Assembly (NCBI GenBank): GCA_047495785.1
Contig: JBLDXI010000001.1
Span: 2,728,001 to 2,792,000, forward strand
DNA length: 64,000 nucleotides
Direction of reading: 5' to 3'
From: Lepidodermella squamata
Lineage: Eukaryota; Animalia; Gastrotricha
The first letter of the stretch is position 1. Each line of letters starts with the position of its first letter. Shown in pieces: positions 1,924 to 57,506 of this stretch. The translations under genes and the position numbers were made by a program. The notes beneath the pieces are model-generated. The model was not told where the DNA came from and searched no databases. It saw nothing but the letters and a program-made list of their open reading frames with translations.

Positions 1924-2809
1924 TTAATAACGCTCAAGCCGGTCTTCAGGCTCTTCGTAGGCCACATTGAATTGTTGCAGCCGTTTCAAGTGCTCGTAGT
2001 ATGTATCATCTGGGACTATTGCTCCGTTTGGCGCACCTTTAGGCGGTTCCAGACCCTCAGTATCAGTTGCGACTCGGAGAGTCATGAAAAGTGGGCTGAA
2101 ATCGGGAAAACGTCAAGTTCTTTTACATAAAATAAGTACCGTCAGATGGGGTGACTTTAGCTGGTGGGGCGACTTTGACATGCCAAAATGGGGTGACTTT
2201 AGCATACCAAAAATCGAAGATGGTAAGGTAAATCCCCCATGAGTGGGGTACCGTTGGATAGCCCAAAGAAAGGCCAACCTGGCTGTGTACAATGTAAATC
2301 AATAAAGCCCACTTAGGGACATATAATAGCAGGTAAAGTTATGAAAAAAATTCAAAAATTCATATTTTTATTGAAACTTTGGTGATTGCTCACTTGACGC
2401 CGTCTGATCAAAATGGAAATCGTATGCCATTTTCAGACTGCATTTCCTCAAGGCTATCCAACGGTACCCCACTCATGGGGGATTTACCTTACCATCTTCG
2501 ATTTTTGGTATGCTAAAGTCACCCCATTTTGGCATGTCAAAGTCGCCCCACCAGCTAAAGTCACCCCATCTGACGGTATGCCATAACTTACCCTATCCTC
2601 GGTTCGTCGATAAGACATTTCGGATCGATACCCTAAAAACATTCTGAATAGGTTACATCAAAATCTCATGTGAACTGTCCACAAACCAGACCCTAAAAAT
2701 ATGCGAAAATTAAGGTATATTATGGAAATAAGTGCCTAATTTTTACCTCCTTCGGTTGAGCCCATCGTGGTATTCTGGGATGCCAAGAAAACCGCTTCCT
2801 TCTGTCCAT
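1924..2809 (-). CDS. Small unknown protein (~93 aa), or alternative 3' exon set of the neighbouring membrane-protein gene; exons 2809-2747, (2692-2687), 2632-2592, 2095-1924
   Basis: Phase-consistent splicing gives MDRRKRFSWHPRIPRWAQPKE-GL-GIDPKCLIDEPRIGPLFMTLRVATDTEGLEPPKGAPNGAIVPDDTYYEHLKRLQQFNVAYEEPEDRLERY*. It shares the RIPRWA...PRxGPLFM motif with the adjacent gene. Confidence 0.7.
2139..2576. mobile_element. Non-autonomous DNA transposon (MITE, Tc1/mariner-pogo type) inside an intron
   Basis: Perfect 125-bp inverted arms (2139-2263 / 2452-2576) beginning CCGTCAGATGGGGTGACTTTAGC, with TA on both sides (2137-2138, 2577-2578). Each arm carries three GGGG(T/C)GACTTT repeats. Removing the element and one TA leaves a typical 56-nt intron. 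Confidence 0.9.
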
Positions 2810-3037: not shown

Positions 3038-4569
3038 TCATTTAAGCAGATTATAGAAAGTCTCCAAATATGTGGCGTTTCCTATAATAACACATAAGAA
3101 GTAGTAGGATTTTTCTCGGTTTTTGCGACATACCTTCAGGCTTGAGAACCATCGAACGTTTCAATAATTCAGCTGCTCCAGACAGATCATCGCCGTCTGG
3201 TCCACCTCCAGCTGTCAGTCGCTGGGCCATGAATAATGGGCCAGGTCGTGGATGCTCTAGAACAGCACCGAGATTCGAGCCAAGATGAGCACCCTAGAAG
3301 TCGTTCAATTATACCTTCCATCAAATGAAATGAAGAGAAAACGCACCGTCGCCTGATCAGCCCAGCGTGGGATTCGATGATTTACCGTCACTTGCGGAAT
3401 TTTGATAGTTCCTCTAACAAACTGAGGCGCCGAGGTTGAAAACTCAGCCGGTCTCCGGCGTTCAGAACGTTCCAAAACCGTTCCGCGAGGTAGCTAATCG
3501 AAGGAAATACCTATTCAATTATCTCTCAACCCCATAAGTAGCGAACCAACTGAGCACATTTAGGCTACGATAGTGAAGCATCAGTTACTAGGACCTACGT
3601 TTATTTCTCGCTGCTCCCTGGCTAAAGGAGGAATCGTGCGATCACCAAATTGACCGCCCATATTTGTTTCTTGCTCGCCAACTTTACCAGTTGCCAACCA
3701 TGATGCTACTGCGGGTTTAACCGGGGCTGTATCGCCAACCTGAGGCTCCGTTGTCCGCAGTTGTCTGACAGTCGGCTGCTGCCTATGGCGATTCGGATCA
3801 TAATCACTAAAACAAGAAAGCCTTTCGATACATCTTCAAAGCAATTCGAAATGTCTAACTCTTCGTTGCCGTAGTCTGGCTGCGTCATAGATTGGCGCGG
3901 ATGATAATGCGCGTTTGTTGCCATTGGATCTGCTCGTTGACTTGTTCCGGCAGTACCGTCTCCGAAACGAACTCGGGATCCTGTCTGATCTTGGCTGTCA
4001 CGAACTTGACCTGGTTGATGCTGTCCCTGCTGACCTTTTCTATCTTCAGCCTTCGATTTTGAGTCTTGCGGACCACCTGCTGAGGGTCTCCTTTCGAGTA
4101 GAGAAGCACTGGATCCTTTTTGACCAGCCTGTTCCAAGTAAGGATAAGCGTTCTTCTCCGATCGAAGCGGTAAAGAATTTGGCGGTAAATTATTTCGTTT
4201 CTGACCCTGCTGGCGTTCCTGTTTTGCACCACCACCTGAAGCAGGCTGGTTTACCAACGGTCGGAATCGAACTGAAGAATTTGAAGGAGAACCGGTGCCG
4301 AAAAACGCTTTGGTTTTGCTCCAACAAGTTGGCTCTGGTCTTCTTCGTATGCAGTAGCAGTGGATCAGAACACTTATTAGAAGGACAATGCCAATGAAAC
4401 CAGCAGCAGCCCCAGCCGCTATAACAGCGATTGAACGCGTTGATAGTGAACCGCTTGAAGCAGTAGAGCTACTTGCGGTTGTTGATGAAGATTGAGCAGA
4501 AATTATTGGAATGTAGACCTCGATCAGCAGGAATGTTAGGATTATCAATACTTCCAGTATTAGAAAATT
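3038..4569 (-). CDS. Unknown type-I membrane protein: signal-peptide-like N-terminus, short S/T-rich ectodomain, one TM, Cys-rich juxtamembrane segment, long cytoplasmic tail; start codon not found in the genome
   Basis: Reads NFLILEVLIILTFLLIEVYIPIISA-QSSSTTASS...IAVIAAGAAAGFIGIVLLISVLIHCYCIRRR. It continues through ~50-nt GT-AG introns (last exons 3493-3347, 3293-3134, 3081-3038) to ...LKPEGNATYLETFYNLLK*. Confidence 0.72.
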
Positions 4570-4659
4570 CTAAATTATGTTAACAATTAGCAAAATCATA
4601 GAATCTCTTTCATTCTTTGACAAAAAAGCACAGAAAAATAACATGAAAAATATGAGTAA

Positions 4660-5778
4660 TCATTTGTTTTTCCTATATTTGTTTCTGTAAAAGAAGTCTA
4701 AGAATGATTCACCAACACCGCCTTTCCCAAGGCCCGTATCTTCGGTCGATTGCGGAGTGCTGCTTATCACCCTTTGCTCAGGAGTTGGCCATTTGAGCGG
4801 AGATGCTTCCGGCATGTTGGTTCCATTGCCTTGGTTAGGCAATGTTCCATTGTACGCTGGAATTTGAGGAGCCATGACGTTCGCTGGGCCGTAAATAATC
4901 GGCTGTTGGTATGGTTGCTGCGGATATTGAACAGGCTGGTAAATTTGCCCGGGCTGTTGTTGGTAGTATTGAGGTTGGGGCGCCGGTTGAAATTTAAATG
5001 GAATTTGCTCCGGCTGGTATTGCTGTGGAGGGAACTGTTGCTGCTGTGGCTGTTGTTGGTATGAAGTCCGAACTGAGGGAGGCGGAACGATAGGTCGATA
5101 TGTCGCTGGGCCTTGAAAGTCTGGCGCGTCATACGGAGTTACCTCGCCTGTTTCCTGGTATGAAGCTAAAGTTGGCTGTTGGATGATCGATTGTCTTTGC
5201 TGCACTTGGGCTCGAGGTGGTTGGGGTTCCGGTTCCATTTCTTGCTCCTCATAGTAAGGCTCTGGCTCGGGCTCAGGAGTTACTGGTAGTTGGATTGGGG
5301 GAGGTTGTCTTTGCGGAGGCTCTTCCTTAGGCTTTTCGACCTTTTTAACCGGTTGCACCTTTGCGGGTTTTGGCAGGTCCGATGAGATCACTCGACCTTT
5401 GCGCACTAGAAATATCTTGTTTCCTAATAACGTTTCAATAGGGGTGGCAATCTTACCGCAGCACATTCTGTTACGACAGCAGCACCAACATAGTATTATT
5501 GATAGGATAATGAGAATTAAAACGAAAATGAACGCAAAAATCACTGGGCCGCCTTTTGTAGGGTCGCTGAGAAAATCTCTAGCCGCGTCTGAAGTTGATT
5601 GCGTCGTAGTGCCCCCTGCATATAATGCGTAAAGCAGTCCAGTGTTGTAATAACCGCGTCGATCTGCAGAGTAGCCTCCATAGGCTAATGCCTGAAGAAA
5701 TGGCGATGCCCCTGTGAAATTAGTCTGTAAAAACAACGGGTCTGAACGCGCAAGTGCGTCCAGGAAGGGCGAAGACAT
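4660..5778 (-). CDS. Unknown single-pass membrane protein, 372 aa, intronless, with P/Q/Y-rich cytoplasmic tail
   Basis: Long ORF with one hydrophobic segment, VIFAFIFVLILIILSIILC, followed by WCCCRNRMCCGK. The N-terminus carries a repeat (SPFLDALA/SPFLQALA). Confidence 0.78.
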   Translation of the reverse strand: MSSPFLDALARSDPLFLQTNFTGASPFLQALAYGGYSADRRGYYNTGLLYALYAGGTTTQSTSDAARDFLSDPTKGGPVIFAFIFVLILIILSIILCWCCCRNRMCCGKIATPIETLLGNKIFLVRKGRVISSDLPKPAKVQPVKKVEKPKEEPPQRQPPPIQLPVTPEPEPEPYYEEQEMEPEPQPPRAQVQQRQSIIQQPTLASYQETGEVTPYDAPDFQGPATYRPIVPPPSVRTSYQQQPQQQQFPPQQYQPEQIPFKFQPAPQPQYYQQQPGQIYQPVQYPQQPYQQPIIYGPANVMAPQIPAYNGTLPNQGNGTNMPEASPLKWPTPEQRVISSTPQSTEDTGLGKGGVGESFLDFFYRNKYRKNK

Positions 5779-6971
5779 TTCTCACGGGACAAGTCGTCTC
5801 ACAGCCTCATCTCGTCTAATTTGACCTATAGCTATTTCAGCAGCATAGCTGGAACATGCGTTATTGCTAGACGCGTATCCAGGGCGTCTTTTCACCGGTA
5901 ACCAAGAGGCTATTCACATGAGCGCTGCGTGCAAAAAGCCAGCGCAGTCCGTTAAAACAGGGCATCAACTTGTATATCTCTCATTTGTGGCAGTTTTTAT
6001 TCACTCAGTCATTTGTGCGAAACCCATCAGGTCAAGCTCGCGCAAAGTTGTACATCATATTTTTCATCATTTAAATAAGAAACATAAACCGTTTGCTTTC
6101 TGTTAACCGCGCTAAGACATCATAATAACTGATTTTTTTATGCAGAAATTATTTTTTCGGTTTTTTCTTCTCTCTCCTTGAGGCACATGACATCGGTCTC
6201 ACCCATTCCATTCTTCAATATGCACAGGAGAGGAGTTGAAACTAAAAAAATGACAATTATAATGACGGAGAGCAGAAAAAAAATAAAACGAGTGACCAAT
6301 ATTTTGGGGCTATTCTTATCGAAGATGTAAAAAAATCGTGCTCAAATTTGAACAGTAAGATCGCCGTATTTATAGAATGGTAAACGGAGATTATAAGCAC
6401 CGGAGAACGTTTGCCATCATACTTTTCGTTTCTAGAAAAATGGGTTAATTTCAGCGGCATAGATGGTGACCGACGCTGGTAAACCTGTATAAAATACAAA
6501 TAAACGAAAAGTTAGTGATAGATAGATGAAAATAACGTGATATTTATTATTACGCGCGAATGCGTAAAACTCCGCCCCCTATCCTACAATAATTAATGTC
6601 GCGGTTTTCGCGCGTGAAGTATTTGCCAACAAGCGCATTTCCGACGGCTAGCCCGTTGATAAAACAAAGCGAGAGGGCCGGCGAAAAATGCGATGAGGCG
6701 CGAAATGTACATAATATGTGTCATCCATAGATGTTGGTGCAAAAAAAACGAAAACGAAAAACTAACCATCTCCGATAATTTGACGCCGCTGAGTTTGTTC
6801 CAGGGGTCCGAGAGATTTGAAGAAGCTAAACAATGTTGAAACAGGCAGGGCGCAATGAAAAAGCACATGTAGTGTAGAATCTGCTAGCTTTTCCAGCTCT
6901 AATTATATAGTGTATGTAGCATCGGGCACTTGAAAGACGCTTGATGTCGTGGTAGAAGCCAGAAGTTAGTG

Positions 6972-9900
6972 TCACACGTCTGTTTCCACGTCGTCGCTGT
7001 CGTCGAGGTGTCGACCGGACAGCGATGTCGCCAGAACGACTCGCCGCGGGGAGGTAGCTGCGGGCTGCGGGGCTGAGCTCGATGTAGGCTTGTCTTTGGT
7101 TCCGGCGACAGCGATTAGTTCTTCAGGCGGTGGAGTCACTTCGCTTCGACGAAAGACGCAGCTAGCTCCAGTTTCCGCAACAGGCCGGTGCGGCATTTGC
7201 TCGGCTACAACCACAGACGGTTCAACGACTTCTGTTGTTGTTGTATGAGCAGTAACAGATATCGAAGGAGCTAAAAAAATTCAAAAATGTGAAGGAAAAT
7301 TATCAAATTGAAGACGCATCATACCTAGGCCTCTAGTTGTTGAAGCTTCAGATACCAGAAGATTTTCGCCTTCTGAAAAATTCTGCTTCGGCCGATTTCT
7401 CCGTCTTCGCCGGCGTTTCGTGGAGAAAGTCGGGCAAGACTCGACGTAAACATAATTTACAGTTTTGTCGTCAGCTTCACTCTCACGATGGTAGAAATAG
7501 TTGAAATTTGAGACAATAACGGGTACAGGCAGTGCGATTGTCAAGACACCAGCAATAGCACACAATGAGCCAACCATTTTGCCCCAGAGGCCTCTAGGTC
7601 GCATGTCACCGTAACCCACAGTTGTCATAGTGACAACAGCCCACCTAAGATAAATAAAATAATGATTTTACGGGGTAAATAAATCAAATTTTACCAGAAA
7701 GCATCGGGAATACTACTGAATTGTTGCGGTTCCGTCTCCACCTCTGCGAAATACACAGCACTGGAGAAGAGTACAACGCCGATGAATAGGAAGAAGATGA
7801 GCAAGCCAAGTTCTCGCATTGAGGCTCTAAGCGTTTGGCCCAGTATTTGCAGGCCCTTAGAATGGCGCGATAACTTGAATATTCTAAACACTCGGACGAG
7901 ACGGATAACTCTCAAAATGGCTAATGACATGGCATGGTTGCTGCCCTTGCTATCATCTGCTATTACGGTGCCGAGAGTAATGAAGTAAGGAATGATGGCG
8001 ACGATGTCAATTGTATTCATTATGTTCTTGAAAAACTGAAATTTATCCGGACACGAAGCGAATCTAATCAGCAGCTCTGAGGTGAACCATATTATGCAAA
8101 TTGTTTCGATGAGGAAAAACGGCTCGGTGAATTTCGGAATATCGTCCTCTTCAATGGAAGTAATTGTTTGATTAGCTTCAGTAACGTTGACTATTTTGTA
8201 GTGCTTGAATTGTGGCAACGTTTCAAGGCAGAATATAACGATCGATAAAAGAATCACAGTTACGGAGAAAATAGCAACCACTCGAGCCCCCATTGAGCTT
8301 TCAGGAAACTCGAACAACAGCCACATTCTCCGTTGAAAACTATTAGCCGGTAGTACTCTTGTTTCGTCCTTCACATAGCCTTCTTCTTCCTTGTACTTTT
8401 CAACAGCATCATTGCCGAGTTCAAAAAATTTAATCTCTTCGAGAAAAACATCGAGAGGAACGTTAGTCGGCCGTCTCAGTTTGCCACCGCTCTGATAGTA
8501 GTAGAGAATAGCGTCAAAACTAGGCCGATTCCGATCGAAGAAGAATTCGTTCCTGAGAGGATCGTAATATTTCAATCGTTTTTGAGGATTTCCCAAGAGG
8601 CTATCCGGAAATTGGGCGAGAGTTCTTGACAGAGTCTCATATCGCATGCCACTGACGTTAATGATGAGCCTCTCCTGCAGATGATAACTAGGAACATCCT
8701 TTCCAATATTTGACGGGATGCCATGATGATGGTGATGGCTATCCGGATCTCGAAAGAAGGTCCTGGAAGAGAAATACATCGCGTTAATAGCATGATATTT
8801 GAGAGCGATGCAGAGTAATATTAGATCGCATATACCCAGAGACTTTTGTTGCTAAACCAGCAACACGGCTATTATTAAATAAAATTGACCATATGATATG
8901 TGATTGCTAGCTAACGCTACCATTAATTATCATCGTTTTTTGTCACACGCTCATCTCCACACTGGACGAGTCTGTGCGTGAGTCCGTGCGCCTAAGGGGC
9001 GTTAGAATCGGCGAACATATGTCGATGATAATGTGCAAAAGGAATGACAATATGCGTGAATAAAAAACCAACAAGTCTCACAAGAAAAGAAAGCGATTAA
9101 TCATGCAATCAGAACGATAAAGAAGTCATATTATTGACAGAATGATACTGCAGTTCAACTTACCGATCAACTGTGTTACTGAGTTTTTCTCCTACTCGAT
9201 CGTGTAATTTCAAGATTTGCGCACGCTCAATGTAACTGAATCCTCCAAGCGAGTCCGCGCTTGGGCCTAACGTTCTCAAGAAGAACTGAATCTTCGCAAC
9301 TTTCAACAACGCATAACGATAATGGAACTTAGCCCTCGAAAAGCGACATCCTCAGCAAGGTATCGATCATTCTCCCGAAAGACACTTTGGCACTCAATCA
9401 GCAAGTTTGAAAAAAATTACCGCGCATTGTTCAAGGTTGTTATAATTAAGTTATCATAATGCAACAATAAATATTTTAAATTAATTAAATAGAGCGGGAT
9501 AACAAAAGACAGAACAAACTGGCAGCATGGGATTTCTAAAAAAATTTTATTTGGGAGATGTTGGCTGGAAAACTTTCCATGGCCCAAGCAGCTCTTAAGT
9601 ACAATCTTCTGTTAAAGATTGATGTATATGTCAGATAGTCAGTTTTTAGCCATGTACTGTACGCGCTTAATCAGCGTTAACCAGTTTTTTGAGAAGATAC
9701 TGATCGCCATTGAACGCATCGCGACAGATCTAAGATTTGTTAAAGCGTTCAGACATTTGACCATTGGCAAGACCATTGGCCTGCATAAGACAGGATTAGC
9801 AGCAAAATCAACGATTTCAACTTTCAGCTCAACTTTCAGCTCAGCAACCAAGAAAGCGAGCAATTTGCAATTTGTAATAAATACATGTCAACAGTGCGAA

Positions 9901-29039: not shown

Positions 29040-29767
29040 GTTGCTTTAAAAGGCTTAGAAATTCAGCCGCACCAGCAACCTCCAGCCCTGATACCCGCCC
29101 CGTTTCCTTATAACAACAACATTCCATTCAATGTTGCTCCGCTGATTCAGCGAATAAATTTGAACTCAACAAACGAAATGCCTCCTGCTCACTCATCGCA
29201 ACGATTTGTCAGAGCGACAAAGCCGTTGAAGTCGATTACTTCAGAAGAACCTGTCGGAATGGTTTCGTTTGAAAATCGAACAGCCTCGACATCGGCCGAG
29301 CTGTTTTGGCTTGATTTTCAGGGTCGGCGAATTTTTTATTGCACGCTGTTGCCCCGGTATCACTTCACGGTTACTACGTTCAAAACGCATCCTTGGGTTT
29401 GCTTTGATTCGAAATCTGGCCGGTTCCTTCACATGAATGGTAAGATTTTTAAATTTCCGAACAAATTCGATAATTTTAAATAATTTTAGGTGAGTACGTT
29501 TATTATCCTGAAAATTCTGTCGGAGATGCAATGCCGCACGAATTAATGGACGAACCCGATATAGTTGTGGCAATCACAGTGCCACTGACTTCGCTTCAAG
29601 AACTCGCAATGGCTGCTGTTCGGAGGTCGTTTACGCTCAAACAAGTGAAAGCTGCTTACAAAGATAAAAAATCACCGCTCAGATTATTTCCTCGACTATA
29701 CGACACGCTAGTGGAACGCTACAAGCCTTTAAATTTTTTGACCCTAGCTGACCTTGGCGTGTCTTGA
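29040..29767 (+). CDS. VHL: von Hippel-Lindau-like E3 substrate receptor (beta domain plus BC-box); start uncertain (28957, acceptor 29040, or Met 29178); intron at ~29440-29489
   Basis: Motifs LKSITSEEPVGMVSFENRT...LFWLDFQGRRIFYCTLLP...TTFKTHPWV and ITVPLTSLQELAMAAVR. Confidence 0.85.
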
Positions 29768-35100: not shown

Positions 35101-37844
35101 TAGGCGGGCTAAGGATCGGGTCGTAGTCGGTCCATTTCGGTAAACGCACCGATTTGCACTGCTCTTCGCTCGGCCAATCGAAATCTTCAAAATACAGCGG
35201 CTTTTCGTAGGTCGACCACGCCCGATATAGCCAACGTGGCCCAATAAAATCTGGTTCCGTAAACTTATTGACTCGACCTGGTAACCTCGACACAACAGGT
35301 CTCACTTTTCTCGGATCAGCGTATTTACCAATGCCAAGTTTCGCCTCGAGTTTATCAGCCCAGAATGGTTGATGGTCAGGTGGCAGGAATGGGCTCGGGC
35401 ATTTTATACTCGACATAGGGTCGGTACTTTCAGCGTACTGGCAATACGTGATAGTACCTCGTCTCCGCTCAGTCTCCACCCAGTTCTTGTACACAATTTC
35501 TTGAACGGCGGCGAATTCGTCCGAAACTTGCTCATCCCGCATCTTACTGATTGTCCGCTGCAGTGCCATGAGCCTGGCTTGTTTAGATCGCAAGAGTGCT
35601 AGGGCAGATTCCCATTCTTTGGCTTGTTTGTTCAATGCAGTTACTAGAGCTTGACGGCACCGAACAGCGTGTAGCCGCAGTTGGGCTGAGGCGACGAGGC
35701 GGGGCTGAAGTTGTAGTGAGGCTTCGTAGTGGCGCGAGGCCTCGTCGTCGCGTTCGAGTGACGCCAATATGTTGGCGAGGGTAAAATGTAAAACACTAAG
35801 ACCGGGGCTCAGATCGAGCGCCCATTGCACGACGATCGCCGCGTCGTCAGACTGGCCATTGCGGTGCAGAATATTGCCAAGATTCAATAGAGGCTCTGAT
35901 TTGTATTTTCTGCAAGCAAAAGAAAAATCCATGATTTTTCCGAAAATGCAAGAATTCGAAATAATTGCGAACATTAAAGAAAAATTGCAAACAAAAACCT
36001 TCACATTTTCTCAGTCTAGGAATAATAAAATCCTTACGATCACAAATTTTGATAGATTCTACTTTGCAGCCAGAACAATTCAATATTTACGCAAGCTACT
36101 ATCCTTATCAAATTCGACTATCTAAATCCCAAATTTGGAGGATCGAATTGGGATTCATTTTGCCCAATCTTCAACAATCATCTCTTCCGAAGACGACTCT
36201 GTTTTACCATTTCCGACATTTCCGGAAAATAGTTGTTCACCAACTTTTTAGATAGATACCAAATCGTTCGTGGCGCGGAAGAACAAGCACTTCAAGCAAA
36301 AACCTAGTGCTAATGATGGGGTATTTTTTGCTTGAAGTGCTGGTCTTGTTTAGATTGCTTGTTCTTCCGCGCCACGAACGAAATATTTTTCAAGGGGCTT
36401 AGTTTTAGCGGAACCAAATTTTGTAATTTTCAATGGACCTAAATCTACTCTTCGAAACTTTCAAGGATATCAGGATTGATGACCATAATTTAGAATAAAT
36501 AATTATCTTCTAATTCAGCGGAAAATGCTGCATAAGACGCATTCTTTACTATAGAATAGATACATTGCCTGAATTTTGCATATTCGAACATATTCGAAAA
36601 GCGAGCCTTGGCTTATCTAAAAAATTAGGTTCCGCAACCTGCAGACTTGGTTCCGCTACAGTCAAATTTAGTTCCGCTCAAATATATTTGGTTTTTTTAT
36701 ATGTTTTATTTATAATGGGTCTGATAATCAACATCTTTCTTTTTATTTCCCCATAAATACTAAGTATTTTAAAATTCCCGATTCAATTCATAGAGCGTAA
36801 ATATAGACAATTTGTTCCGCTACCAGGTGAATAATTTAGCTCGCACTTGACATCGGACAATTTTTGTCCTACTAACCCGGTTAAAAAAAACAATCATTCA
36901 TTTATTTTCAATACCAATACCGCAACTACTGGTAGTTCTTTTGATAAAATTATGGTACATCCACTTACGTTGGGGCGTAATGAAGAGCTCGACGAAGGCA
37001 TTCAATAGACGCAGATGTATTCCCTTTCATTCTCCAGAAAAATGACGCCATCGAATAAGCTACCCAAGATTCTTGGTTCTGAATACATAGACAAATTTAG
37101 TAAGGCGAAAGGTTCAATAAAAACACGTCATACCCTTTTCAAAGTTTGCTGAATAGCATGTCCGAATTGGTCGACGGTCATTCCAGGCGGTACGACAACG
37201 CTCCTGAGTGCAGTCTCGGAAATCGAGGGCATTTTCTTGCGATTGCGTATACTCGACAAGTGTTCCATCGAATGCATAGAAAAGTCCATTTTGTGAGCCC
37301 AACACTTCGGTTCCTGGTACGGATTGGCCGGCTGTTGTTGGTGCAGCTTAGCTGACCCGCCTTTACCCGACGAAGGTGACAGCGACGTAGTAGCCATGTC
37401 TAATACACTGTGAACGTTGATATGATCCTCCAATTTCAAACCATAATGACTGAGCGGTAAAACAGTTGACGTGTAAAAATCAAATTCGTAGACAGGCTTG
37501 CCGGCCGCTTTGCAGTTGTCATCACTCTCCATCACCTCCTTTTGCAGGGACCAGATGTCGGTTTCATCGAGTCGAACACCTTCCTTAGGCTGCAGATCTT
37601 TAAGGTGGTCGCGGACGCTTTTCATTTCATTCGCGCGGTCCATTTGCTGAAACACCGCGGCCAGGTCGTAAGGCCGCCGTAGGGCAAATGCCGAGTCACG
37701 TGACGCTTGAATTCGGCCCCGTTCCGTCACTACCCAGTGCGTCATCGCATTGACGCCGCAAACAATCGTCAGAACAACGGTGATCAGGTGCAGGAAGAAG
37801 TCGGCGCCGCTTGAGGGGCATTTCATCATTGACAAGCGGACCAT
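32172..37844 (-). CDS. TTC17: Tetratricopeptide repeat protein 17; exons 37844-37134, 37078-36969, 35909-32660, 32375-32172
   Basis: Signal peptide followed by THWVVTERGRIQ...FALRRPYDL, FSMHSMEHL, SFFWRMKGN...CLRRALHYAP and repeated YWR..G...A..CL TPR modules. Confidence 0.9.
36264..36381. repeat. Short fold-back (hairpin) element in a TTC17 intron
   Basis: 26-bp perfect inverted termini TCGTTCGTGGCGCGGAAGAACAAGCA / TGCTTGTTCTTCCGCGCCACGAACGA, plus an inner inverted pair AGCACTTCAAGCAAAAA / TTTTTGCTTGAAGTGCT. Confidence 0.8.
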
Positions 37845-38152
37845 TTCTTTCTAGGTTGTTCAGTACGTGTGAATATCGAACAAGAAATAGCCACAACAGC
37901 TCACATTGCTAAATTAATAATTCAACTCTAAAAATAAGAAAAAGTCCAGAAATTGTAGAAAACGGTCGTTGGTATTTTTAAATACCGAGGCAAAAATCAC
38001 AGCTTAAAACTGGAGAAAAAGTTCAAACCGGCAGATTGAAAAAAAGAAATAGAAAACCCAGATTAAACACGAAAAATTCCACCTTAATCCCTCGAAATCA
38101 CTAATTTTAAGAGTTTAAACTGGGTTTCCTGAGAGGCAAGTTTAATCAAAAT

Positions 38153-40689
38153 TTAGGTGCGTTTCGGCGCATTATCGGCCGTCATTGAAAGCGAATATTG
38201 GCCACCGCTGAAATTCAACTGACCAGCAGCCACCTTACTGTCGAGAAATATCTTCAACTGAGCGGCTGTCATATCAGGCGGTGAGTTGTTGGCGACTGTA
38301 AAAGCTCGCAGCATTTGAACGATGCGTTCCAAGCTCAACGTATGCAAATTCGTCAAAATTCCGACAACGTACAACCAGAAAACTTGCAGTTCTTGCTCCT
38401 TTTGCCGCGCGACTGAAACTGTCATCGCAGCTTCGGCCTGCTCACCCTCGCCGCCATTCGCAGACGCGGACATGGCTGATGTGATGATGTCTCCTGTGGC
38501 GGATGCGCCGGTTGACGGTCGTCTCGAGACGAGTTCAAAAATTTCCGGTTCAACCTCTTGTAGAATCTGCCGACCCATCCAATAGACTAAACGTTGGCGG
38601 CAAACTGGAGTGGGCAATTCACAAGCGGCTGCCAATTCAGCTAGCGACCACTTAGGCCTGCGTGAGAGTAAAAAAATTTCGTATTAAATATTTAACAAGA
38701 TGGGTGTTTTTCTTTGAATAAATAATGATACCCCGTATGTAATTTTGTATTCGAAATGCTGCTAAAATGAACATTTTCGAGCGAAACAAGCGAGAAATTT
38801 CATACAAATTCGTCGAACTATGAGGCTGTACAGCTAATTCTTCTTTTGAAGTAAAAGCTAGCTAACGTGACTCAATTTTCTATCATCAGCTGAACATAAC
38901 ACTATAAAGGCATCTTGACTTAAAACCCCACTCACTTTTCAAAAAACATGTAGAGAAGGACGGCATAGACCGGCGTGGCTGACACCTCAAGCTTAGACCC
39001 ATCGTTGTACTCCAGTTCGAGGGTAACACTGCCACAATGAGCCTGCCAGTCGATGGCACGTTGGCGCTTATGAGAAGGGAACGCCTCGGCCAGGGACCGA
39101 AGAACAGCATCCATAGATTCGGGTAGATGCAGATTGTCCTCCTTTAACGGTGGCCAATATTGGTCTGAGATGATGAGGAATGAAAACGCGATTCCGGGGA
39201 ATTTTCGAAGAGGGCCGCAGCTCGGGTCTGTTACCAAACTGCTGGTATTAGCCGAGTTCCACGCCGCGGCGAAAGATTCAGAATTTTGGACGTCATTCAA
39301 CATTACATCACAGTTCGACAGGGTAGAATCACCCACGACGCGTTTTAACAGATCCAACTGGGCTTGTTGTTCGGAAATCGGGCAATTAGCCCCGGCGTCA
39401 GTGGTTAGCAACCTCTCGGCTAGAAGATTCGTATATTCGACAGCAAACGCCTTTCTCGAGCCGAATATTGAGACTAGCGAGTCGACAACATCACCGCCCT
39501 TTGGTAACAGGTTTCGATGTCTGGGTTCAGGGCGCCATTGCCGCCAAGCTGCGTCGAAATCTTCGCCCTGGTCGGTCATCGAAAGGCTACTCAGAATTTG
39601 AGGATCGTCTATTAGGCACTGAACAACAGCTCGAATAGCATCGGCGCGGAGGCGAAGGTATTTTTGGAAGAGTAGAACAACGTGATCGGTGAAATAGCCG
39701 CGAGCCACCTTATCGAGTACGGAAAGGCCTCGAACCAGTTGAACATACGTCGATAAGACCTCGGCAGTCGGGACTCCAGGGTTGAAAACCAGGGTTTCAA
39801 TATCGGATGCCAATCTCTTCAGGAGTTTCGGGCTGAAATTTTTATCCGCTTCGAGAAGTGAAGCCAGATCTTTCAGAGCAGCTTCGGAAGACGGGTAGCG
39901 AGATAAAGTTCGATACGCAGTTGCCATATGCATATTAAACGCGACTTGTTTGAACAGTCGCGGAATAGAATCGCACGAAAAAGCGAGTGGTGATTCGGCG
40001 AAGGAAGGCGCGGCTTGAGCGATGAAGTTCAAAAAAGCTGTGCACAGATCGATGAAAGAGTCAACTGTAGGTTTTATTGCATTTCCGGAATACGTTGCGG
40101 TGAAAAGCGACGCCGATAGATTCAACGTGATGAAATTAGAAAAAACCTCGCTGAGATCAGCAAACGCTTCCAGGCAGAACCCGCAATCGCTGAGAAGAAA
40201 CGTCAAAGTTGTTGATGTTAGCGATAAAATTTCCGGGCAGAAACATGATGCAGTTACGCAGAACTCGGTGTGGACGCTCAAATTCGACGAAGAATTCGCG
40301 AGAGCTGACAACGCATTAGTCAGCATGTTTTCGACGATTTTATTCAAATCAGCCGGCGGATTGCAGATCAAAACACCGCCGGCGTATTTGAGCAGTTCAG
40401 CGTTGTACTGTTCTGGGTTTGGTAGACCGCAATCGTTGAGAACTGCGGTGATATTTCGGCGAATCGCGTTGAACATTTCAACAACTTGCCGCATTCGCAG
40501 CAGTTTGTCATCGAAAGCACCGGATCGCTGGAAACCACCGATGAGCTGTTGAATAATGCGACCGATTCGTTCTTTCGAAGCTTTTAGCGTCGCCTTGACC
40601 GGCGTTGCACCGGGCATTGATTTCAACAAAGCGCTGAGATTGGGGTTTGTTGCCATGGCTAGCGATAGCGGCGCGGCTATTTCAGTCAT
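38153..40689 (-). CDS. ANAPC2: Anaphase-promoting complex subunit 2 (cullin-like); exons 40689-38936, 38657-38153
   Basis: Motifs FNPGVPTAEVLSTYV, YLRLRADAIRAVV, WRPEP, DVVDSLVSIFGSRKAFAVEYTNLLAERLL and CDVMLNDV; C-terminal winged helix FWLYVVGILTN..LSLERI. Confidence 0.92.
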
Positions 40690-42120: not shown

Positions 42121-45100
42121 TTATTTCTTATTGGCAAACCAATCATCCTCGTCGTCATCGTCATCGTCGCCAAAAAGAGCCCCGCCTCGGGTAGTAGGCA
42201 CAGGCGGTGGAGGCGCTTTGTTGTTCGCGGCTTCGGGTGACTCATCTTGGTCGTCGATTTTACTTTGGTCCAACAGTGACAAATTGTTATCGCTATTATT
42301 TGCTGGCAGTTTTTCAGCGGTAGGAGCTGGAGCTGGAGGCATTGCCGAAAACATATCCTGCAATCAATACAAATTAAATTATAAAAATGGGAGAAACGAC
42401 TTACAAAGCACAAAAAATACGATTAGGTGTTGAAAAAATATTAAATTGCGCGCAGAAAAAATGAAATAAAAAATTGAGGCGCGTGCGAGGTCGCGAGCCA
42501 CCAAAATAGCGCTCCGAAATAGCACGTGTTCAGAAAATTGATGATAACCTCAATAATCGAAATTCTGAAATCAAATTAGCAGCCAATTTGTCAACAGGTT
42601 GAAGCCTTGATAGCTAATTCTAGGCTCAGAATAATTTCGTACAATTAGGATCAAGTCCAGTTCTGAACTTTGGCGAGGGCGGTCGTACGACAATCGAGTA
42701 GGCTCGCTCAAATACAAGCGCCTGTTTCAACAAAGGCCTAAAACGCCGCCAAAAACTTGCACCGAATATGCGTGAATAAGGCAATTAAAAATATGAAACG
42801 CATTATCTTCAGTTTTTTTCACTAAACTGTGAAATTAAAAATACAACATGGGTGCGCAAGGAGGACTGAAATAGTTTGACGTATATTTTGGTTAATAGTT
42901 CAAAAAAACGTGACTCGAAATAGAGATGAAACTTGAGATGGATAGCATTCAATCGAAGAAATATATACCTCCATGTCTGAATCAGAATCGTCGCCGAAGA
43001 GCGATTCTTTTTTCTTTGACGGTTCTTCCTTCGGAACTGAAGATTCAGTGGAGGATTCAGGCTGCGCGGTGTGTTCCTCTTCGTTTGATGGAAGCTCCGG
43101 TTCTGGTGCCGCTGCGGGTTCCGGCTCCGGCACCGGCTCCGGCTCCGGCTGGCTGGGCTCTTCTTTCTCCTCCGGTTCGGGGAGCGATTCCTCTACAGGG
43201 GGAGGATTGCTGGAAGACAAAGGATCTTCAGGGACTTCTTCCTGAATCGCCGGCGGCTCGTCAACTTCCTCAGACTTATCCTCGGAAATTTCTTCAACTT
43301 TCTCCTCGACAGCGGGAACTTCCGGTGTTTCTAGTTGTTCAACTTCAGGAGTTTCTGATTGCTCGACTTGCTCGTCAGCAATCTCATCAGACGCCTGGTC
43401 GCTATTTTCTTGATTTTGCTGCGAAGGGGATGGTTCTGGAGTCTCCATTGTGACTTGCAATGGATCAAAGGCAGGAGGCTCGTTACGCTCATCGTCAGCG
43501 GTTTCTTGATCCTCCTCAACATCAGGGTTACCCTTAGCATCCTCGGGCACAACATGATCACGATGGACAGGAGTGATAGTGGGCTCCTCGGTGGCACCTT
43601 CGGGTGTTATATACACAGGAGCAATACCGCGGGGATAATCGCTCGAATCCTCATCTTGCTGTGGCTCATATTCTCTAGCGTCGTTTTCTTCTTGAAGTGA
43701 ATGATCGGAAACATCTCCATTTTCAACAACAGCGTATGACGACCCCTCGCTGTCCCTGGCAGTTGGTTCCGGGGGCTGTTCCTCATTTACCTCCGGTTTC
43801 TCTGGCTCCGCTGGCTCAGGAGGCGCTTGTTTTTCATGAACTTCATTGATTAAGGTGGGGGCAGCGACAGGTACTGGGACTTCCTCCCTTTCGATGGCCT
43901 TAGCGGGTGGGACAACCGCAGGAGCAGCAGAATTTCCACTCAAGAAGTTCAAAGTAGTCTGCTTAATGACAGCTAGCAACGTTTTCAGCACCTCTGCGCC
44001 TAAGTATTCACTCTCGTTCGAAATGGAGCCTCTCGAGGACTGATACACCTGGTTCATTATCGTTTTGACTTGCTTCGAAACTTTTGCCTCGACATCAGCT
44101 GGCGATAACGCTGATTGGAATTGCTCACGTTCTTGCGCAATTTGAGCTTCGTGCTGCTCGCGCATTAATTGCATTTTCGACTTGAGGGAGGAATTAACCT
44201 GTTTTGAGTCATCAAGCTGTCGCGTCAAGTCTTGAACTTGCGACGTCAAAGCATGAACTTCGGCAGATTTTGCGCGCAAATCCTGACCAACTCGCTCACG
44301 ATCGGCAATAATTTCCTGAATTTCGCCCATTTTCGCCTTCAATTGCTCGCTGAGACGATCGCCGTTTGATCGCGATACTAAAATATCGTTCTGCAACCGG
44401 CTGATTTCGTCTTCGAGGGATCGAATTCGACCAGATGAAGCAGTTTGGTCTTCACTAGCCTTGCTAAGCAAATCTGTTAGACTAGAATCCTTGGCGGATA
44501 GAGCTGCTTGGGTCATTTCAAGTTGCTTCTTCAAATCCGCGATTTCGGTTTGAAGAACCGCAACACGACGCCTTTCGGTCGTTAATTCACCCGTAGCCAG
44601 CGACTCTGAATCTTTCGCAGCGGCGGCTTCTTGCTGCATTTTCTTGACAGATTCAGCCGATTCTTCAACGGTTTTCGCAGCGGCCGCGACTGATTCTTTC
44701 ATCGAAATCACTTCGTTACGTAAATCAAGCTCAGCACGTCGTTTTTCTGCGACCAACAGGTGGAGATCGCCGACTTCAGCGGTTAGCGTGCTAACTCGCA
44801 GGGCAAGAGCAGCTTTTTCTTCCTCCAATTGCAAAACGCGACCCGCCGTTTGCGCAGCCGAGGTTGAAAGCGCGTCACTTCTATCTGAAAGAGCTCGGTT
44901 CGACTGTTCAATCAATTTTTGCTTATCGATAAGCAACTCGGAGACGCGTAAATTCAAGTCTTCAATTTTCGACTGGCGAGCTTTCAAATCTTCACGAAGC
45001 CGCTCTTCCTCGGCAACCATGCGTTGCAGGGCTCCGAGAACAGCTCGGCCGTCCAGCGTTCCACCCGCGACTTCAATAGCAGCTGAAGACTGAATCGAAT

Positions 45101-51783: not shown

Positions 51784-52704
51784 GATATATTTATATCATA
51801 TCTAGAAAACAGAAAAAGAAGTCAAAATGCGAGTAAATCCGAAATATGGCATATTGAATACTTATTTTGCCTTTCGCCAACCATCAACACCCAAAATCTC
51901 CAATTGAGCGTGATTTTTGCGTTAGGCGTAGGTAACACAATGAACGCAAAGGGCATTTATTAAGCAAGAGTCTAAGAGTTGAGAGCTCAGCGACAAAATA
52001 TTCACTATTAAAAGAGCAAATAATCGGGTCCATTCAGTCGGGTTCCGTGGAAACACGAGTAACAAAATACTTGAACGGATAGGATTTTACAAATTGTTTT
52101 GTGTTGTATGTTGTACGAGCAAAAAAGGATCTCAACCCCTACGGTATGAATCCATGCGTATTATATTAACAAAAATAATAATGGCCTAATCCAGAAGATC
52201 ACTATTTATCATCGTTTATCAATTGATTGGTGTCATTTAGGGATATCGAATATCGAATATCGATAGGTGTCTGATGTCAGACCGAATTCTGAGCGGCGCA
52301 TTACGGGTCATGGGTCATGTTGTCTAAAATAACATGCATCTTGCACATATTGATCGAATATTGGCGAAAACGCGGATAGCGCAAATATCCACCATAGTCC
52401 ATGATAACTGAAGCTAAATAGGTGCGAATTTGAACCCTACGGAAAACCCTCAATCCAGGATTTGCTGAAAAACGGTTCCGAAAAGCAACAAAAAACGGCC
52501 ACCGGATAGCGGCTAGGATCATTCATGCTTGACGTTTATTAAAATTTTAATCATTCACCTAAATTAACAGTTTGTTTTGTCTAAAAAACAATATTACAAA
52601 ATCTTAAGCGTCCTTAGCAATTTATGGTCCTCCTTGAATTTTTTAGCCCCGGTAAAGCCAATCGAAACAGATAATTCAAATACCTATATCTGCAACATAA
52701 CGCG

Positions 52705-55700: not shown

Positions 55701-57506
55701 TAGAGCTGAGGATGAAGTAGCGTACAGCAAACACGAACGTCTGCTAAAGGGAGCGAAGAAGCTAACGAAAAAGTTGTCGAAGATTTCAACCGTCGCTCCA
55801 GGAGAATTAGCCGCGGCGGAAAAAGCTGAAAAGGAAAAGGAGAAACCGGCGAAGAAAACAAAGGCGAAAGCTAAAGTTAAAAGCAAGGCTAAACGGCTAA
55901 CTAAGACAAAAGTAGCGGCTATTGTTGCAATTGTTGACAGTAAGACGTCGCCCGAACGACCGAAGCTGTTGTACCAGCGTTCACCGTGATCACCCTTCGT
56001 CGGTTAAATACAATTATCAAAATGTCATTATAATTTTTCCAATTAAATTGCATGTCTAAGCACCGAAAAAAATCAAATTTCCTTGGTTTAAACGCTGTTT
56101 TTCTGTAAACACAGGCAGCTCTGGTGCCCAGCCAACGTTGAGTGAAGGCAGCCACCAAAAAGAAGGCGAAGGTGAGAATAAGGACAAGGAAACTAGGCCT
56201 CCAGTTCCAGTTGTTCTCAGGTTTGTGGTCGACAAAATGTTTTAAGTTTTTGAAAAGTTAGCCCTTAAATTTCAGGCTTCCACAAAACGTGATGTTCTTT
56301 GAAGCTCCTCAGGTCGCACGATGGGCTGACGACAGAAAATGTTGGGTTTCGGATGCTATCACGAATCTTCAGTACAAAGAAGGTGGGTCTTCAAGTTTCA
56401 ACTTTAATTAAAATATAAATCTTGGTTTTATTCTTTTAGATCAACGCCTGATCTCATTTAGGCTGGAAAAATTCGGAGTTTTCACGCTTATCCAAGACCG
56501 GCATATCAACATGCCATTCCAATCTTGGGAAATGCGGCCTCTTGGCCTCAATCGCGTCCTTATTCACATCGTGGCAGCGATTGCTGAGGTTGAAATTGAA
56601 ATTGACGAGGACAAGTGCGCTCTTGTTAAGCCGGACGATAAGAACGAAATCAAGCATTTGATCGGCAAATTCATGCCGTTGGACAAACTTATCGAAGCGA
56701 TGAGAAATGCTGGCATCAACTTGTTTCCGGAGCCTGATTCTTACAAATTCGTTGGCATTCAAAATAAGGTATGCATATTTGTATAAAATAATTTCGGGTT
56801 TGCCAAGCGGACAGCCTAAATTTAAGGTTCCAAATTCTAGATCGAAATTTCCCCAAAATTAAGTTTTCGAGTTTCAAATTTTTTACTAGAATCTGAATTT
56901 ATTATTACCTATGTCTAACTGATAGATTTCACTAAAGAGCGGTCAGTTTCGATATCGATTCCAAGTATTGATTTTGAAAATTGGTGATCATTCCGATTTC
57001 AGAAGTCTAGGTAGCCAATCAGGGCCAGGGCGCTCCAATTTAGTGCTGGAACCTCTATTTCATTGTTTCTAATATTTCTACTCAATACTTCTTTCTTTTA
57101 CCAGAATCGTCTGGTCGAGAAACGGACTTATCAACACATGGCCCTAGTAGCGTCTGGAATGGCTTTTTCCTGGTCTAAATGGAACTCGGACTGCAACGAT
57201 AGTCGTAAATGCCTGCTCCAGGGCGTGAGCTGGAGCAACAAAGAAGCGCCACTTGAGGACGATTGGAAGTTGATCCAAGTCGAGCGCCACCGGGCTGTTC
57301 AACTCGCTATGGGCGAATTCGCGGAATCATTCAGCGACGAACGACTTCCAGACTCGCCATACTTTGCCACTATTTTCCATCTGGCCAAGCACATGACTGG
57401 CGGGTCTGAGTCTCAAAACTGGGGCCGCATCGTCGACTCATCGTATCAATTCATATCCACGGTCGGCAAATTTCTATCCGCAACCCGTCTGCTAGTTTTC
57501 AGCTGA
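52705..57506 (+). CDS. DNAI7: CASC1/DNAI7 (IC97/CFAP94), axonemal inner dynein arm I1 intermediate chain; many short exons, first coding exon is ATG only
   Basis: M|PPKKDGK..., E/K-rich coil, WNRYLRCDGTPDPTIPAEINTYIN, LCIWGNLIKNPR, VGGIFHINLLQLPPQPK, DRHINMPFQSWEMRP, GINLFP and FSWSKWN. Confidence 0.9.

What the first reader, a model, noticed from the sequence alone, without database searches (positions are those of the whole stretch)
4480..4660. Membrane-protein gene with no genomic start codon: initiator AUG may be donated by a trans-spliced leader
Seen: 90 nt after the upstream gene's stop (4660), an acceptor AATTTAG| at 4570 opens directly in phase 0 into NFLILEVLIILTFLLIEVYIPIISA-QSSS. 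This is a complete signal-peptide-like sequence lacking only Met. The acceptor's TAG is itself an in-frame stop. The next in-frame ATG lies far beyond the TM segment, and the ATG+GT combinations I tried in the spacer give the wrong phase. Known: flatworm spliced leaders end in AUG, which can act as the initiator. Inference: this ORF is completed by SL trans-splicing, which would also hint at the lineage. VHL (acceptor 29039, open phase-0 frame for 46 codons before the first Met) and eIF3m (18-nt open in-frame leader) fit the same model more weakly.
Basis: partly seen in the sequence, partly recalled or inferred. Interest (0 to 1): 0.85.

Follow-up and report, generated by a model that had tools for sequence, protein, structure and literature searches.

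The report
Start-codon-less membrane-anchor extension of gene
The "membrane-protein gene without a start codon" is really a long, ATG-free, in-frame 5' extension of a conserved five-exon gene that follows its neighbour operon-style; whether its first methionine comes from a trans-spliced leader or from a CUG codon cannot be settled from DNA alone.

Summary
On the minus strand AATTTAG| ends at 4570 and an ORF opens in phase 0 (NFLILEVL…). The TAG is in frame, and the first in-frame ATG is codon 216 (3924).

New context:
- The ORF is not a stand-alone gene. It is exon 1 (4569-3860) of a five-exon gene. A 53-nt intron joins it in frame to conserved exons.
- A related metagenome species has this gene, with a positionally conserved acceptor 87 nt after the same upstream gene, its own ATG 20 nt later, and no membrane module.
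- Window ATG 3888 is the positional homolog of that start.
- The 675 nt from 4599 to 3924 contain no ATG in any frame, yet stay open in frame.
- The only optimal-context near-cognate in the extension is CTG 4557-4555 (A at -3, G at +4), just before the hydrophobic segment.

Best reading (about 0.4): the mRNA is trans-spliced at 4570. A minor membrane-tethered isoform starts at CUG. Leaky scanning gives the conserved short protein from AUG 3924/3888.

Main rival (about 0.27): an AUG donated by the spliced leader (SL). A second ATG-less, phase-0 exon in the relative keeps the idea alive.

Other windows of this scan also noted SL-type acceptors across this genome.

The parts
4660..5778 (-). Upstream gene: 372-aa membrane protein with no signal peptide, one TM segment and a Cys-rich juxtamembrane stretch. 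Stop TGA at 4662-4660.
   Evidence: ORF. Its homolog P0001 in a metagenome relative has conserved N- and C-termini that end at the same place.
4573..4659 (-). AT-rich (23% GC) intercistronic spacer. It is open in the same frame as both neighbouring ORFs. It holds ATGs at 4644 and 4599 (in frame) and 4613, and a possible degenerate poly(A) signal AATGAA at 4614-4609.
4570..4576 (-). Splice acceptor AATTTAG|. It has no usable paired donor. Its TAG is an in-frame stop.
   Evidence: The position is conserved (90 vs 87 nt after the stop) and an 11-nt core is identical in relative L002.
3860..4569 (-). Exon 1, 710 nt, open in phase 0 from its first base. It encodes a signal-peptide-like segment, a Ser/Thr-rich stretch, a TM segment with an RRR stop-transfer, and a ~150-aa low-complexity tail. 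No homolog was found.
4555..4557 (-). In-frame CTG (codon 5) with A at -3 and G at +4: the candidate non-AUG initiator. It would give M-EVLIILTFLLIEVYIPIISA|QSSS.
   Evidence: It is the only optimal-context near-cognate in the 215 codons. The chance of such a CTG within the first 8 codons is 2.8%.
4354..4434 (-). Predicted transmembrane segment (residues ~46-72, AVIAAGAAAGFIGIVLLISVLIHCYC), followed by IRRR.
   Evidence: Kyte-Doolittle 19-residue windows above 1.6.
3925..4598 (-). ATG desert: no ATG in any of the three frames between ATG 4599 and ATG 3924, a gap of 675 nt.
   Evidence: About 9.5-10 ATGs are expected from composition. With codon shuffles, P(no out-of-frame ATG) is 0.006. This is the longest sense-strand ATG-free run in a coding region of the window.
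3886..3924 (-). The first two in-frame ATGs (3924-3922 and 3888-3886). ATG 3888 (MTQPD…) is the positional homolog of the relative's start (MEVRPD…).
3807..3859 (-). Intron 1, 53 nt, GAAGA|GTTAGA…TTTTAG|T, phase 2. It joins exon 1 in frame to the conserved exon 2.
   Evidence: Sequence. The spliced frame is open for 422 codons. Homology to the relative resumes exactly across the junction.
3038..3806 (-). Exons 2-5 of the conserved gene (3806-3599, 3493-3347, 3293-3134, 3081-3038 including TGA), with introns of 105, 53 and 52 nt.
   Evidence: Identity to the L002 ortholog is 117 of 193 residues (61%). Exon 4 is 77% identical. No Pfam family matched.

Best explanation
The region is the 5' end of a five-exon gene, the second gene of a same-strand, operon-like pair.

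Its pre-mRNA is cut and capped by spliced-leader trans-splicing at AATTTAG|4570. This step is inferred.

The conserved ~195-aa protein, with orthologs in a related species, starts at AUG 3888 (or 3924). In this lineage the first exon has grown by ~680 nt. The added sequence stays in frame, has no stop, and has no AUG in any frame.

I propose that a fraction of scanning ribosomes initiate at the near-cognate CUG 4557-4555, which has A at -3 and G at +4. That would make a minor long isoform: signal-peptide-like segment, Ser/Thr stalk, TM helix, cytoplasmic linker, then the conserved domain, so that the conserved domain is tethered to a membrane. The remaining ribosomes would scan on, unhindered because no AUG intervenes, to AUG 3924/3888 and make the ancestral soluble protein.

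Shown: the exon structure, the open frame, the ATG desert, the CUG context, and the orthology of the short form.

Inferred: trans-splicing at 4570, use of the CUG, and the existence of two isoforms.
For: Gene model:
- A 53-nt phase-2 intron gives one 422-codon frame.
- Residues 229-421 align to the relative's protein residues 3-191 at 61% identity. The relative's start matches window ATG 3888.
- The relative lacks the extension, so the short form is the ancestral, functional one.

The extension looks translated:
- It is stop-free beyond chance (0 of 20,000 shuffles).
- It has positive codon bias only in this frame.

The extension also looks scanned:
- It has zero ATGs in all frames over 675 nt against ~10 expected.
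- Codon shuffles give P = 0.006 for no out-of-frame ATG, and there is no Met in 215 codons.
- Together these two properties are what alternative initiation by leaky scanning requires.

The candidate start:
- The only optimal-context near-cognate in the extension is the CTG at codon 5, directly before the hydrophobic core (chance 2.8%).
- The downstream AUGs have weak contexts (C or T at -3).
- The first 100 nt are unstructured.
Against: - There are no transcript or ribosome data.
- The extension has no homolog anywhere and is absent from the only relative. Conservation, the usual criterion for non-AUG extensions, therefore fails.
- Its codon score (+0.10) is lower than that of conserved genes (0.17-0.40).
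- The signal-peptide-like start is encoded by T-rich, spacer-like DNA and could be accidental.
- The exact phase-0 opening at the acceptor is needed only by the SL-AUG rival (one chance in three otherwise).
- The ATG desert was noticed post hoc. Long ATG-free runs of 413-449 nt also occur in another low-complexity coding region of the window.
Confidence: 0.4

Rival explanations
1. The spliced leader of this organism ends in AUG, as in flatworms. Trans-splicing at 4570 places that AUG directly in phase 0, giving M-NFLILEVL….
For: - The ORF opens in phase 0 at the first exon base, at a positionally conserved unpaired acceptor.
- A second case exists in the relative. The first exon of the small downstream paralog in L002 (acceptor cgttttag|CCAAGG at ~2501) has no ATG and no good near-cognate. 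It is conserved from its first codon. Its acceptor sits exactly where the window ortholog has its ATG (gcag|GCA ATG, 2809-2807): both give M plus 10 residues before RIPRW.
- The mechanism is documented in flatworms. In S. mansoni the SL AUG is in frame in 28% of trans-spliced transcripts, and more than 40 cDNAs need it (Cheng et al. 2006, as cited in PMC9851317).
- Scan notes report SL-type acceptors genome-wide and an SL-like gene in the rDNA unit. These notes are unchecked.
Against: - The SL sequence is unknown.
- Only flatworm SLs are known to end in AUG. Chaetognath SLs, for example, end in …TTTAAA (PMC2481426).
- No flatworm appears among 68 RNF14 hits. The best named hits are molluscs at 37-39%.
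- The eIF3m and VHL 'support' is not conserved in the relative.
- There is no excess of in-frame acceptors (11 of 24, p = 0.14).
- Out-of-frame phase-0 reading frames are not depleted relative to a control phase.
- In the relative, an SL AUG on this same gene would open a ~40-codon overlapping out-of-frame uORF.
- The L002 paralog could instead be an alternative 3' cassette, spliced from the phase-0 donors of exon 2 or 3.
- This model gives no reason for the ATG desert unless the SL AUG is leaky.
Confidence: 0.27
2. The extension is not translated. Only the conserved short protein is made, from AUG 3924/3888. In this reading, 4569-3925 is an unusually long leader, or the relic of a membrane-protein gene that lost its start and fused to its neighbour.
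For: - The relative makes do with a 20-nt leader and no membrane module.
- The extension has no homologs and weak codon bias.
- The ATG desert fits a leader kept free of upstream AUGs.
Against: - A 215-codon stop-free frame that is in frame with the downstream AUG, across a correctly phased intron, is very unlikely for an untranslated leader (0 of 20,000 shuffles).
- A decaying relic would not stay ATG-free in all frames.
- Leaders in this genome are typically 1-40 nt.
Confidence: 0.15
3. A genomic exon ending in ATG is cis-spliced to 4570. The candidates are the mini-exon-like 6823-6767 (ttgtttag|…GAGATG|GTTAGT), which would leave the upstream gene nested in a 2.2-kb intron, or the GGT|GTTGGT donor at 4716, which would give a fusion protein.
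For: - ATG|GT first exons do occur in this window, for example 52705.
- The 6769 site has both a good acceptor and a good donor.
- Any ATG| exon is automatically in phase with 4569.
- Unchecked scan notes describe genes nested between a leader exon and coding exons elsewhere in this genome.
Against: - The 6769 site lies in the probable 3'UTR of the Kv gene. About 0.1 such site is expected there by chance, and 11 occur in the window.
- Nearer acceptors would compete for its donor.
- Introns here are 48-105 nt, apart from one of ~490 nt that carries a repeat.
- The 4716 donor would delete the conserved C-terminus of the upstream protein.
Confidence: 0.08
4. Assembly or sequencing artefact, or stop-codon readthrough. 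In this reading the TAG at 4572-4570 is really a sense codon or is read through, and translation starts at ATG 4599 or 4644 in the spacer.
For: The spacer is open and in frame, with two in-frame ATGs, and is closed only by this single TAG.
Against: - A 29-codon open frame in one given frame of AT-rich DNA has roughly a 1-in-13 chance.
- No known readthrough context follows the TAG (TAG AAT TTT).
- The TAG is part of an acceptor conserved in the relative.
- The resulting hydrophobic N-terminus would be atypically long.
Confidence: 0.04

Closest known systems
[quoted passage not shown] 2006, J Biol Chem 281:733; summarised in PMC9851317)
   Same: - An unpaired acceptor in phase 0 with a long ORF.
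- No genomic in-frame ATG before the N-terminal targeting sequence.
- A genome with operon-like packing and acceptors just upstream of most starts.
   Different: - The leader sequence is unknown here.
- The lineage is not shown to be a flatworm.
- There is a conserved internal AUG start with an ATG-free path to it, which the flatworm cases do not require.
Non-AUG (CUG) initiated N-terminal extensions with leaky scanning to a downstream AUG, as in FGF2, MYC and the conserved human set of Ivanov et al. 2011 (from my own knowledge); non-canonical starts on trans-spliced mRNAs are reported in PMC9851317
   Same: - An in-frame, stop-free extension upstream of the conserved AUG.
- A CUG with purine at -3 and G at +4.
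- No AUG in any frame between the two starts.
- The extension adds a targeting or anchoring signal.
   Different: - The extension is not conserved: it is absent in the only relative.
- It is very long (about 220 codons).
- It sits on a presumably SL-capped mRNA.
- There are no profiling data.
Nematode/tunicate/chaetognath-type operons resolved by SL trans-splicing
   Same: - Same-strand genes 87-90 nt apart.
- A poly(A)-signal-like element ~40 nt before an unpaired acceptor.
- Microsynteny of the pair, and of RNF14-eIF3m-CLPB-FKBP15, is conserved in a relative.
   Different: No SL sequence or transcript evidence is available. Acceptors here are mostly TAG rather than CAG.

Membership tests
SL-donated initiator AUG (flatworm type) | The spliced leader ends in AUG immediately before its donor site | not testable with these tools
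   The SL RNA gene is not in the window (Rfam scan). The one ATG|GT…Sm-like match, at 52705, is an ordinary first exon plus intron. The scan note s1-373945 places an SL-like gene in the rDNA unit, but no sequence is given.
SL-donated initiator AUG (flatworm type) | The acceptor is in phase 0 with the ORF and no stop lies between the acceptor and the coding body | tested here: met
   The frame is open from 4569 for 422 codons after splicing.
SL-donated initiator AUG (flatworm type) | The mRNA is actually trans-spliced at that acceptor | tested here: inconclusive
   Only indirect evidence: there is no usable cis donor, and the acceptor is positionally conserved in the relative. There are no RNA data.
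SL-donated initiator AUG (flatworm type) | The organism belongs to Platyhelminthes, the only phylum with a known AUG-terminated SL | tested here: inconclusive
   The best named RNF14 hits are molluscs at 37-39%. No flatworm is among the 68 hits. Closer relatives occur only in unnamed ENA metagenome contigs.
SL-donated initiator AUG (flatworm type) | Other genes of the genome show the same dependence or phase bias | tested here: not met
   The eIF3m and VHL leaders are not conserved as coding in the relative. In-frame acceptors number 11 of 24 (p = 0.14), and there is no depletion of overlapping phase-0 frames. One further candidate exists, the L002 paralog exon, but it has a cis-splicing alternative.
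Non-AUG-initiated N-terminal extension with leaky scanning | A near-cognate codon in strong Kozak context at the 5' end of an in-frame open extension | tested here: met
   CTG 4557-4555, context ataCTGg. It is the only such site in 215 codons.
Non-AUG-initiated N-terminal extension with leaky scanning | No AUG in any frame between the upstream start and the main AUG | tested here: met
   Zero ATGs in 4598-3925.
Non-AUG-initiated N-terminal extension with leaky scanning | The extension is conserved at the protein level in other species | tested here: not met
   The extension is absent from the relative's ortholog. No homolog was found in 5.8 billion clusters within the length range searched.
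Non-AUG-initiated N-terminal extension with leaky scanning | Initiation at the non-AUG codon is seen by profiling or proteomics | not testable with these tools
   No expression data are available.
Downstream gene of an SL-resolved operon | Same-strand neighbour about 100 nt upstream, 3'-end signal in the spacer, unpaired acceptor before the ORF, arrangement conserved | tested here: met
   The spacers are 90 nt here and 87 nt in the relative. The signals are AATGAA here and AATAAA in the relative. The acceptor core is conserved. The poly(A) signal here is only a variant.

The most novel reading that the evidence does not exclude
A metazoan outside the flatworms has a spliced leader that ends in AUG. 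Here it is used to bolt a signal peptide and membrane anchor onto a conserved soluble protein. In the sister species it supplies the start of the small RIPRW-motif paralog. Under this reading, SL-donated start codons would be a recurrent route by which downstream operon genes gain or replace N-termini.
Probability: 0.15. Interest if true: 0.6.

Novelty: new member of a known kind. Interest (0 to 1): 0.35.

Why it matters
If either translated model is right, this locus shows how a soluble, conserved protein acquires a membrane-tethered isoform. Its first exon grew by ~680 nt without gaining a single AUG.

It is also a clean single-locus test of a gene-annotation question for the whole genome: does this organism's spliced leader carry a start codon? 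If it does, predictors that demand a genomic ATG would truncate such genes.

If the leader turns out to lack AUG, the locus becomes a good candidate for CUG initiation on a trans-spliced mRNA.

Tried and rejected
**Spacer and cis-splicing options**
- ATG-plus-GT combinations in the spacer give introns of 73, 62 and 52 nt, all out of phase.
- The in-phase intron 4584-4570 is 15 nt, far below the 48-nt minimum seen here.
- The fusion through GGT|GTTGGT (4716) is rejected because the upstream protein's C-terminus is conserved up to its stop.
- My first alignment of the relative's ATG GAA GTT with window CTG GAA GTA was dropped. The relative's exon 1 matches ATG 3888 and its phase-2 donor better.

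**Homology and family searches**
- Homolog search with the 287-aa ORF: nothing.
- Pfam on exon 1 and on exons 2-4: only sub-threshold Mid2- and DAP10-like hits on exon 1.
- BLASTP of exon 1 against the upstream protein: no paralogy.
- JGI metagenome scan with the exon-4 alignment: nothing.
- Exact-sequence look-ups of window proteins: not on record.

**Lineage and SL sequence**
- Lineage identification through the RNF14 hit list, the protein atlas and the literature was inconclusive.
- A search for an SL gene in the window found only an ordinary ATG|GT first exon.

**Statistical and structural tests**
- The phase statistics of acceptor-to-ATG leaders were not significant.
- A search for an RNA hairpin downstream of the CUG found none.
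Full report
**1. Observation**

All coordinates are on the minus strand.

- The upstream ORF (5778-4660, 372 aa) ends with TGA at 4662-4660.
- Ninety nt later AATTTAG ends at 4570.
- From 4569 the frame reads NFLILEVLIILTFLLIEVYIPIISA QSSS….
- The TAG of the acceptor is in frame.
- In-frame ATGs occur only at 3924 and 3888. Spacer ATGs lie at 4644, 4613 and 4599.
- None of the spacer GT sites gives a correctly phased intron of plausible size. The one in-phase GT…AG (4584-4570) is 15 nt, whereas introns in this window are 48-105 nt.

The open frame is real in the statistical sense. None of 20,000 shuffles of the 645 nt was stop-free. Codon usage trained on eleven well-supported ORFs of the window is positive only in the stated frame (+0.10 against -0.26 and -0.30), though this is lower than for conserved genes (0.17-0.40).

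**2. What the ORF belongs to**

The 287-codon ORF listed mechanically (stop at 3706) is not the gene.

A 53-nt intron, GAAGA|GTTAGA…TTTTAG|T (3859-3807, phase 2), joins exon 1 (4569-3860) in frame to four more exons: 3806-3599, 3493-3347, 3293-3134 and 3081-3038. This gives one 422-codon frame.

Exons 2-5 are conserved. The only database relative of the upstream protein (P0001) led to ENA metagenome contigs L001-L003. In these contigs the same upstream gene is followed, after an 87-nt spacer, by the ortholog of exons 2-5.

A local alignment gives 117 of 193 identical residues, window residues 229-421 against the relative's 3-191. The relative's gene starts ATG GAA GTT CGG CCT GAT TT|gtaagt, 20 nt after an acceptor. 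Window ATG 3888 (MTQPD…, phase-2 donor 29 nt later) is its positional homolog.

The relative has no counterpart of the 680-nt extension. No homolog of the extension was found at all, and Pfam gives nothing.

Larger synteny is conserved with the same metagenome organism (L004, L005). It covers RNF14, eIF3m, CLPB, FKBP15, ANAPC2, a TTC17-like gene, a JmjC gene, VHL and an SPT2-like gene. The comparison is therefore between true orthologous loci.

**3. The acceptor**

The spacers are alike in length (90 and 87 nt). The 11 bases ATTTAG|AATTT around the acceptor are identical. The relative has AATAAA, and the window AATGAA, about 40 nt upstream of the acceptor.

The upstream protein's C-terminus (…SFLD.FYRNKYRK) is conserved right up to the stop. 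This argues against the cis fusion through the GGT|GTTGGT donor at 4716.

Unchecked first-stage notes report similar unpaired acceptors before most start codons across this genome. My own sample confirms them for many genes here and in the relative. I therefore accept 4570 as a trans-splice-type acceptor of a downstream operon gene. This is an inference, because there are no RNA data.

**4.

Between ATG 4599 and ATG 3924 there is no ATG in any frame, a gap of 675 nt.

- Composition predicts about 10 ATGs (mononucleotide shuffles). The sense-strand coding density of this window predicts 9.5.
- Shuffling codons, which keeps the Met-free composition, still predicts 4.3 out-of-frame ATGs, with P(0) = 0.006.
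- The absence of Met from 215 codons is itself unusual. The Met frequency is 1.7% in the training set and 1.3% in the similar upstream protein.
- The other very long ATG-free runs in the window lie antisense to coding regions. The longest sense-coding ones are 449 and 413 nt, in FKBP15.

The stretch is thus both kept open in frame and kept free of AUGs. The first property suggests translation. The second suggests that scanning ribosomes must pass through it to AUG 3924/3888. Alternative initiation by leaky scanning needs both.

**5. Candidate initiators**

Codon 5 is CTG (4557-4555), with A at -3 and G at +4. It is the only optimal-context CTG, GTG, TTG or ACG in the 215 codons. The chance of an optimal CTG within the first eight codons is 2.8%.

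Starting there gives M-EVLIILTFLLIEVYIPIISA|QSSS. This is followed by a Ser/Thr stretch, a TM helix (residues ~46-72) and an RRR stop-transfer. The downstream AUGs have weak contexts. No stable structure follows the CTG (z = +1.2).

**6. Testing the SL-AUG idea**

The SL gene is not in the window. The single ATG|GT…Sm-like match, at 52705, is an ordinary first exon ending in ATG plus a 52-nt intron. The scan's note of an SL-like gene in the rDNA unit carries no sequence.

The lineage could not be fixed.
- The best named RNF14 hits are molluscs at 37-39%, with no flatworm, rotifer or nematode among the 68 hits.
- The only closer sequences are unnamed metagenome contigs.

From the literature:
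- Flatworm SLs end in AUG. [quoted passage not shown]
- Chaetognath SLs, whose genes often lie in rDNA clusters, end in …TTTAAA (PMC2481426, PMC12460157).

- The relative's eIF3m leader is also 18 nt but has an in-frame TAG.
- The relative's VHL has 64 nt between acceptor and ATG. Its ORF is in phase 1, and phase 0 closes after 12 codons. The window's 46-codon VHL leader does look coding-like (+0.19).

With a rule-based choice of acceptors, 11 of 24 acceptor-to-ATG distances are multiples of three (p = 0.14). Out-of-frame phase-0 frames overlap the CDS no less often than a control phase (3 of 13 against 4 of 13). I see no genome-level footprint of an SL AUG in this sample. Flatworms show none either, so this test does not exclude the model.

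One observation does favour the model. In the relative, the first exon of the small downstream paralog (RIPRW…PRIG.L.M module) has no ATG and no good near-cognate. It is conserved from its first codon. Its acceptor sits exactly where the window ortholog has its ATG. The alternative explanation is an alternative 3' cassette spliced from the phase-0 donors of exon 2 or 3.

**7. Other alternatives**

- An ATG|GTTAGT mini-exon-like element (6823-6767) lies between the Kv stop (6974) and the upstream gene. It would be in phase with 4569. However, it needs a 2.2-kb intron containing a whole same-strand gene, and it is compatible with chance: 11 such sites occur in the window.
- The spacer is open in frame, with ATGs at 4644 and 4599 closed only by the TAG. 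Readthrough or an assembly error is possible but has no support.

**8. Verdict**

The locus is a downstream operon gene whose conserved short protein starts at AUG 3888/3924. It carries a lineage-specific, AUG-free, in-frame 5' extension encoding a membrane anchor.

| Reading | Confidence |
|---|---|
| CUG initiation plus leaky scanning | ~0.40 |
| SL-donated AUG | ~0.27 |
| Untranslated leader or relic | ~0.15 |
| Cis-spliced ATG exon | ~0.08 |
| Artefact or readthrough | ~0.04 |

Either leading model is a new instance of a known mechanism. The decisive data are the last three bases of the SL and 5'-end reads at 4569.

Noticed in passing
L002:2501-2560 (relative) vs window 2812-2747 (minus): The first exon of the small RIPRW…PRIG.L.M paralog downstream of the gene has no ATG in the relative. 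Its acceptor sits exactly at the position of the window ortholog's ATG (2809-2807). Poly(A) signals precede the acceptor in both species. It is either a second SL-AUG candidate or an alternative 3' cassette.
   Followed up: partly
window 7506-7619 (minus); Kv gene ~8779-6974: A Shaker-type Kv channel gene carries a full-length match to the Rfam potassium-channel RNA-editing signal (RF00485, 87 bits). The protein ends in ETDV, a PDZ-binding-type C-terminus.
   Followed up: no
window 6767-6823 (minus): An exon-like element with a good acceptor (ttgtttag|) and a donor directly after an ATG (GAGATG|GTTAGT). It lies 150 nt after the Kv stop. Its downstream partner is unknown.
   Followed up: partly
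window 52647-52760 (plus): A first exon that ends exactly with the start codon (…GCGATG|GTATGC), followed by a 52-nt intron and then PPKKDGKVSG…. Start-codon-terminated first exons therefore exist in this genome.
   Followed up: partly
window ~2150-2590 (minus): A long intron (~490 nt) in the downstream paralog holds a pair of ~100-nt inverted repeats. This looks like a MITE-type insertion, read by eye from the sequence.
   Followed up: no
window 37844-37128 and 35974-32648 (minus); L005:5545-9679: The 238-aa secreted-looking ORF and the 1108-aa TPR ORF are probably one TTC17-like gene. In the relative, the first ORF runs into a GT…AG intron that joins it to the TPR ORF.
   Followed up: partly
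window 29040-29177 (plus): The VHL leader is open in frame for 46 codons from its acceptor, with coding-like codon usage (+0.19). The relative's VHL is also open upstream (21 codons) but in a different phase relative to its acceptor, and the sequences do not align.
   Followed up: partly
window, e.g. 55334-56028, 37688-38322, 44435-45019, 60850-61385: The other very long ATG-free runs (535-694 nt) all lie antisense to coding regions. This means the CAT trinucleotide is strongly depleted on coding strands here.
   Followed up: no
window 4040-3990 (minus), residue ~190 of exon 1: The low-complexity cytoplasmic linker contains RVRF, which matches the PP1-docking RVxF pattern. This is pattern recognition only.
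   Followed up: no
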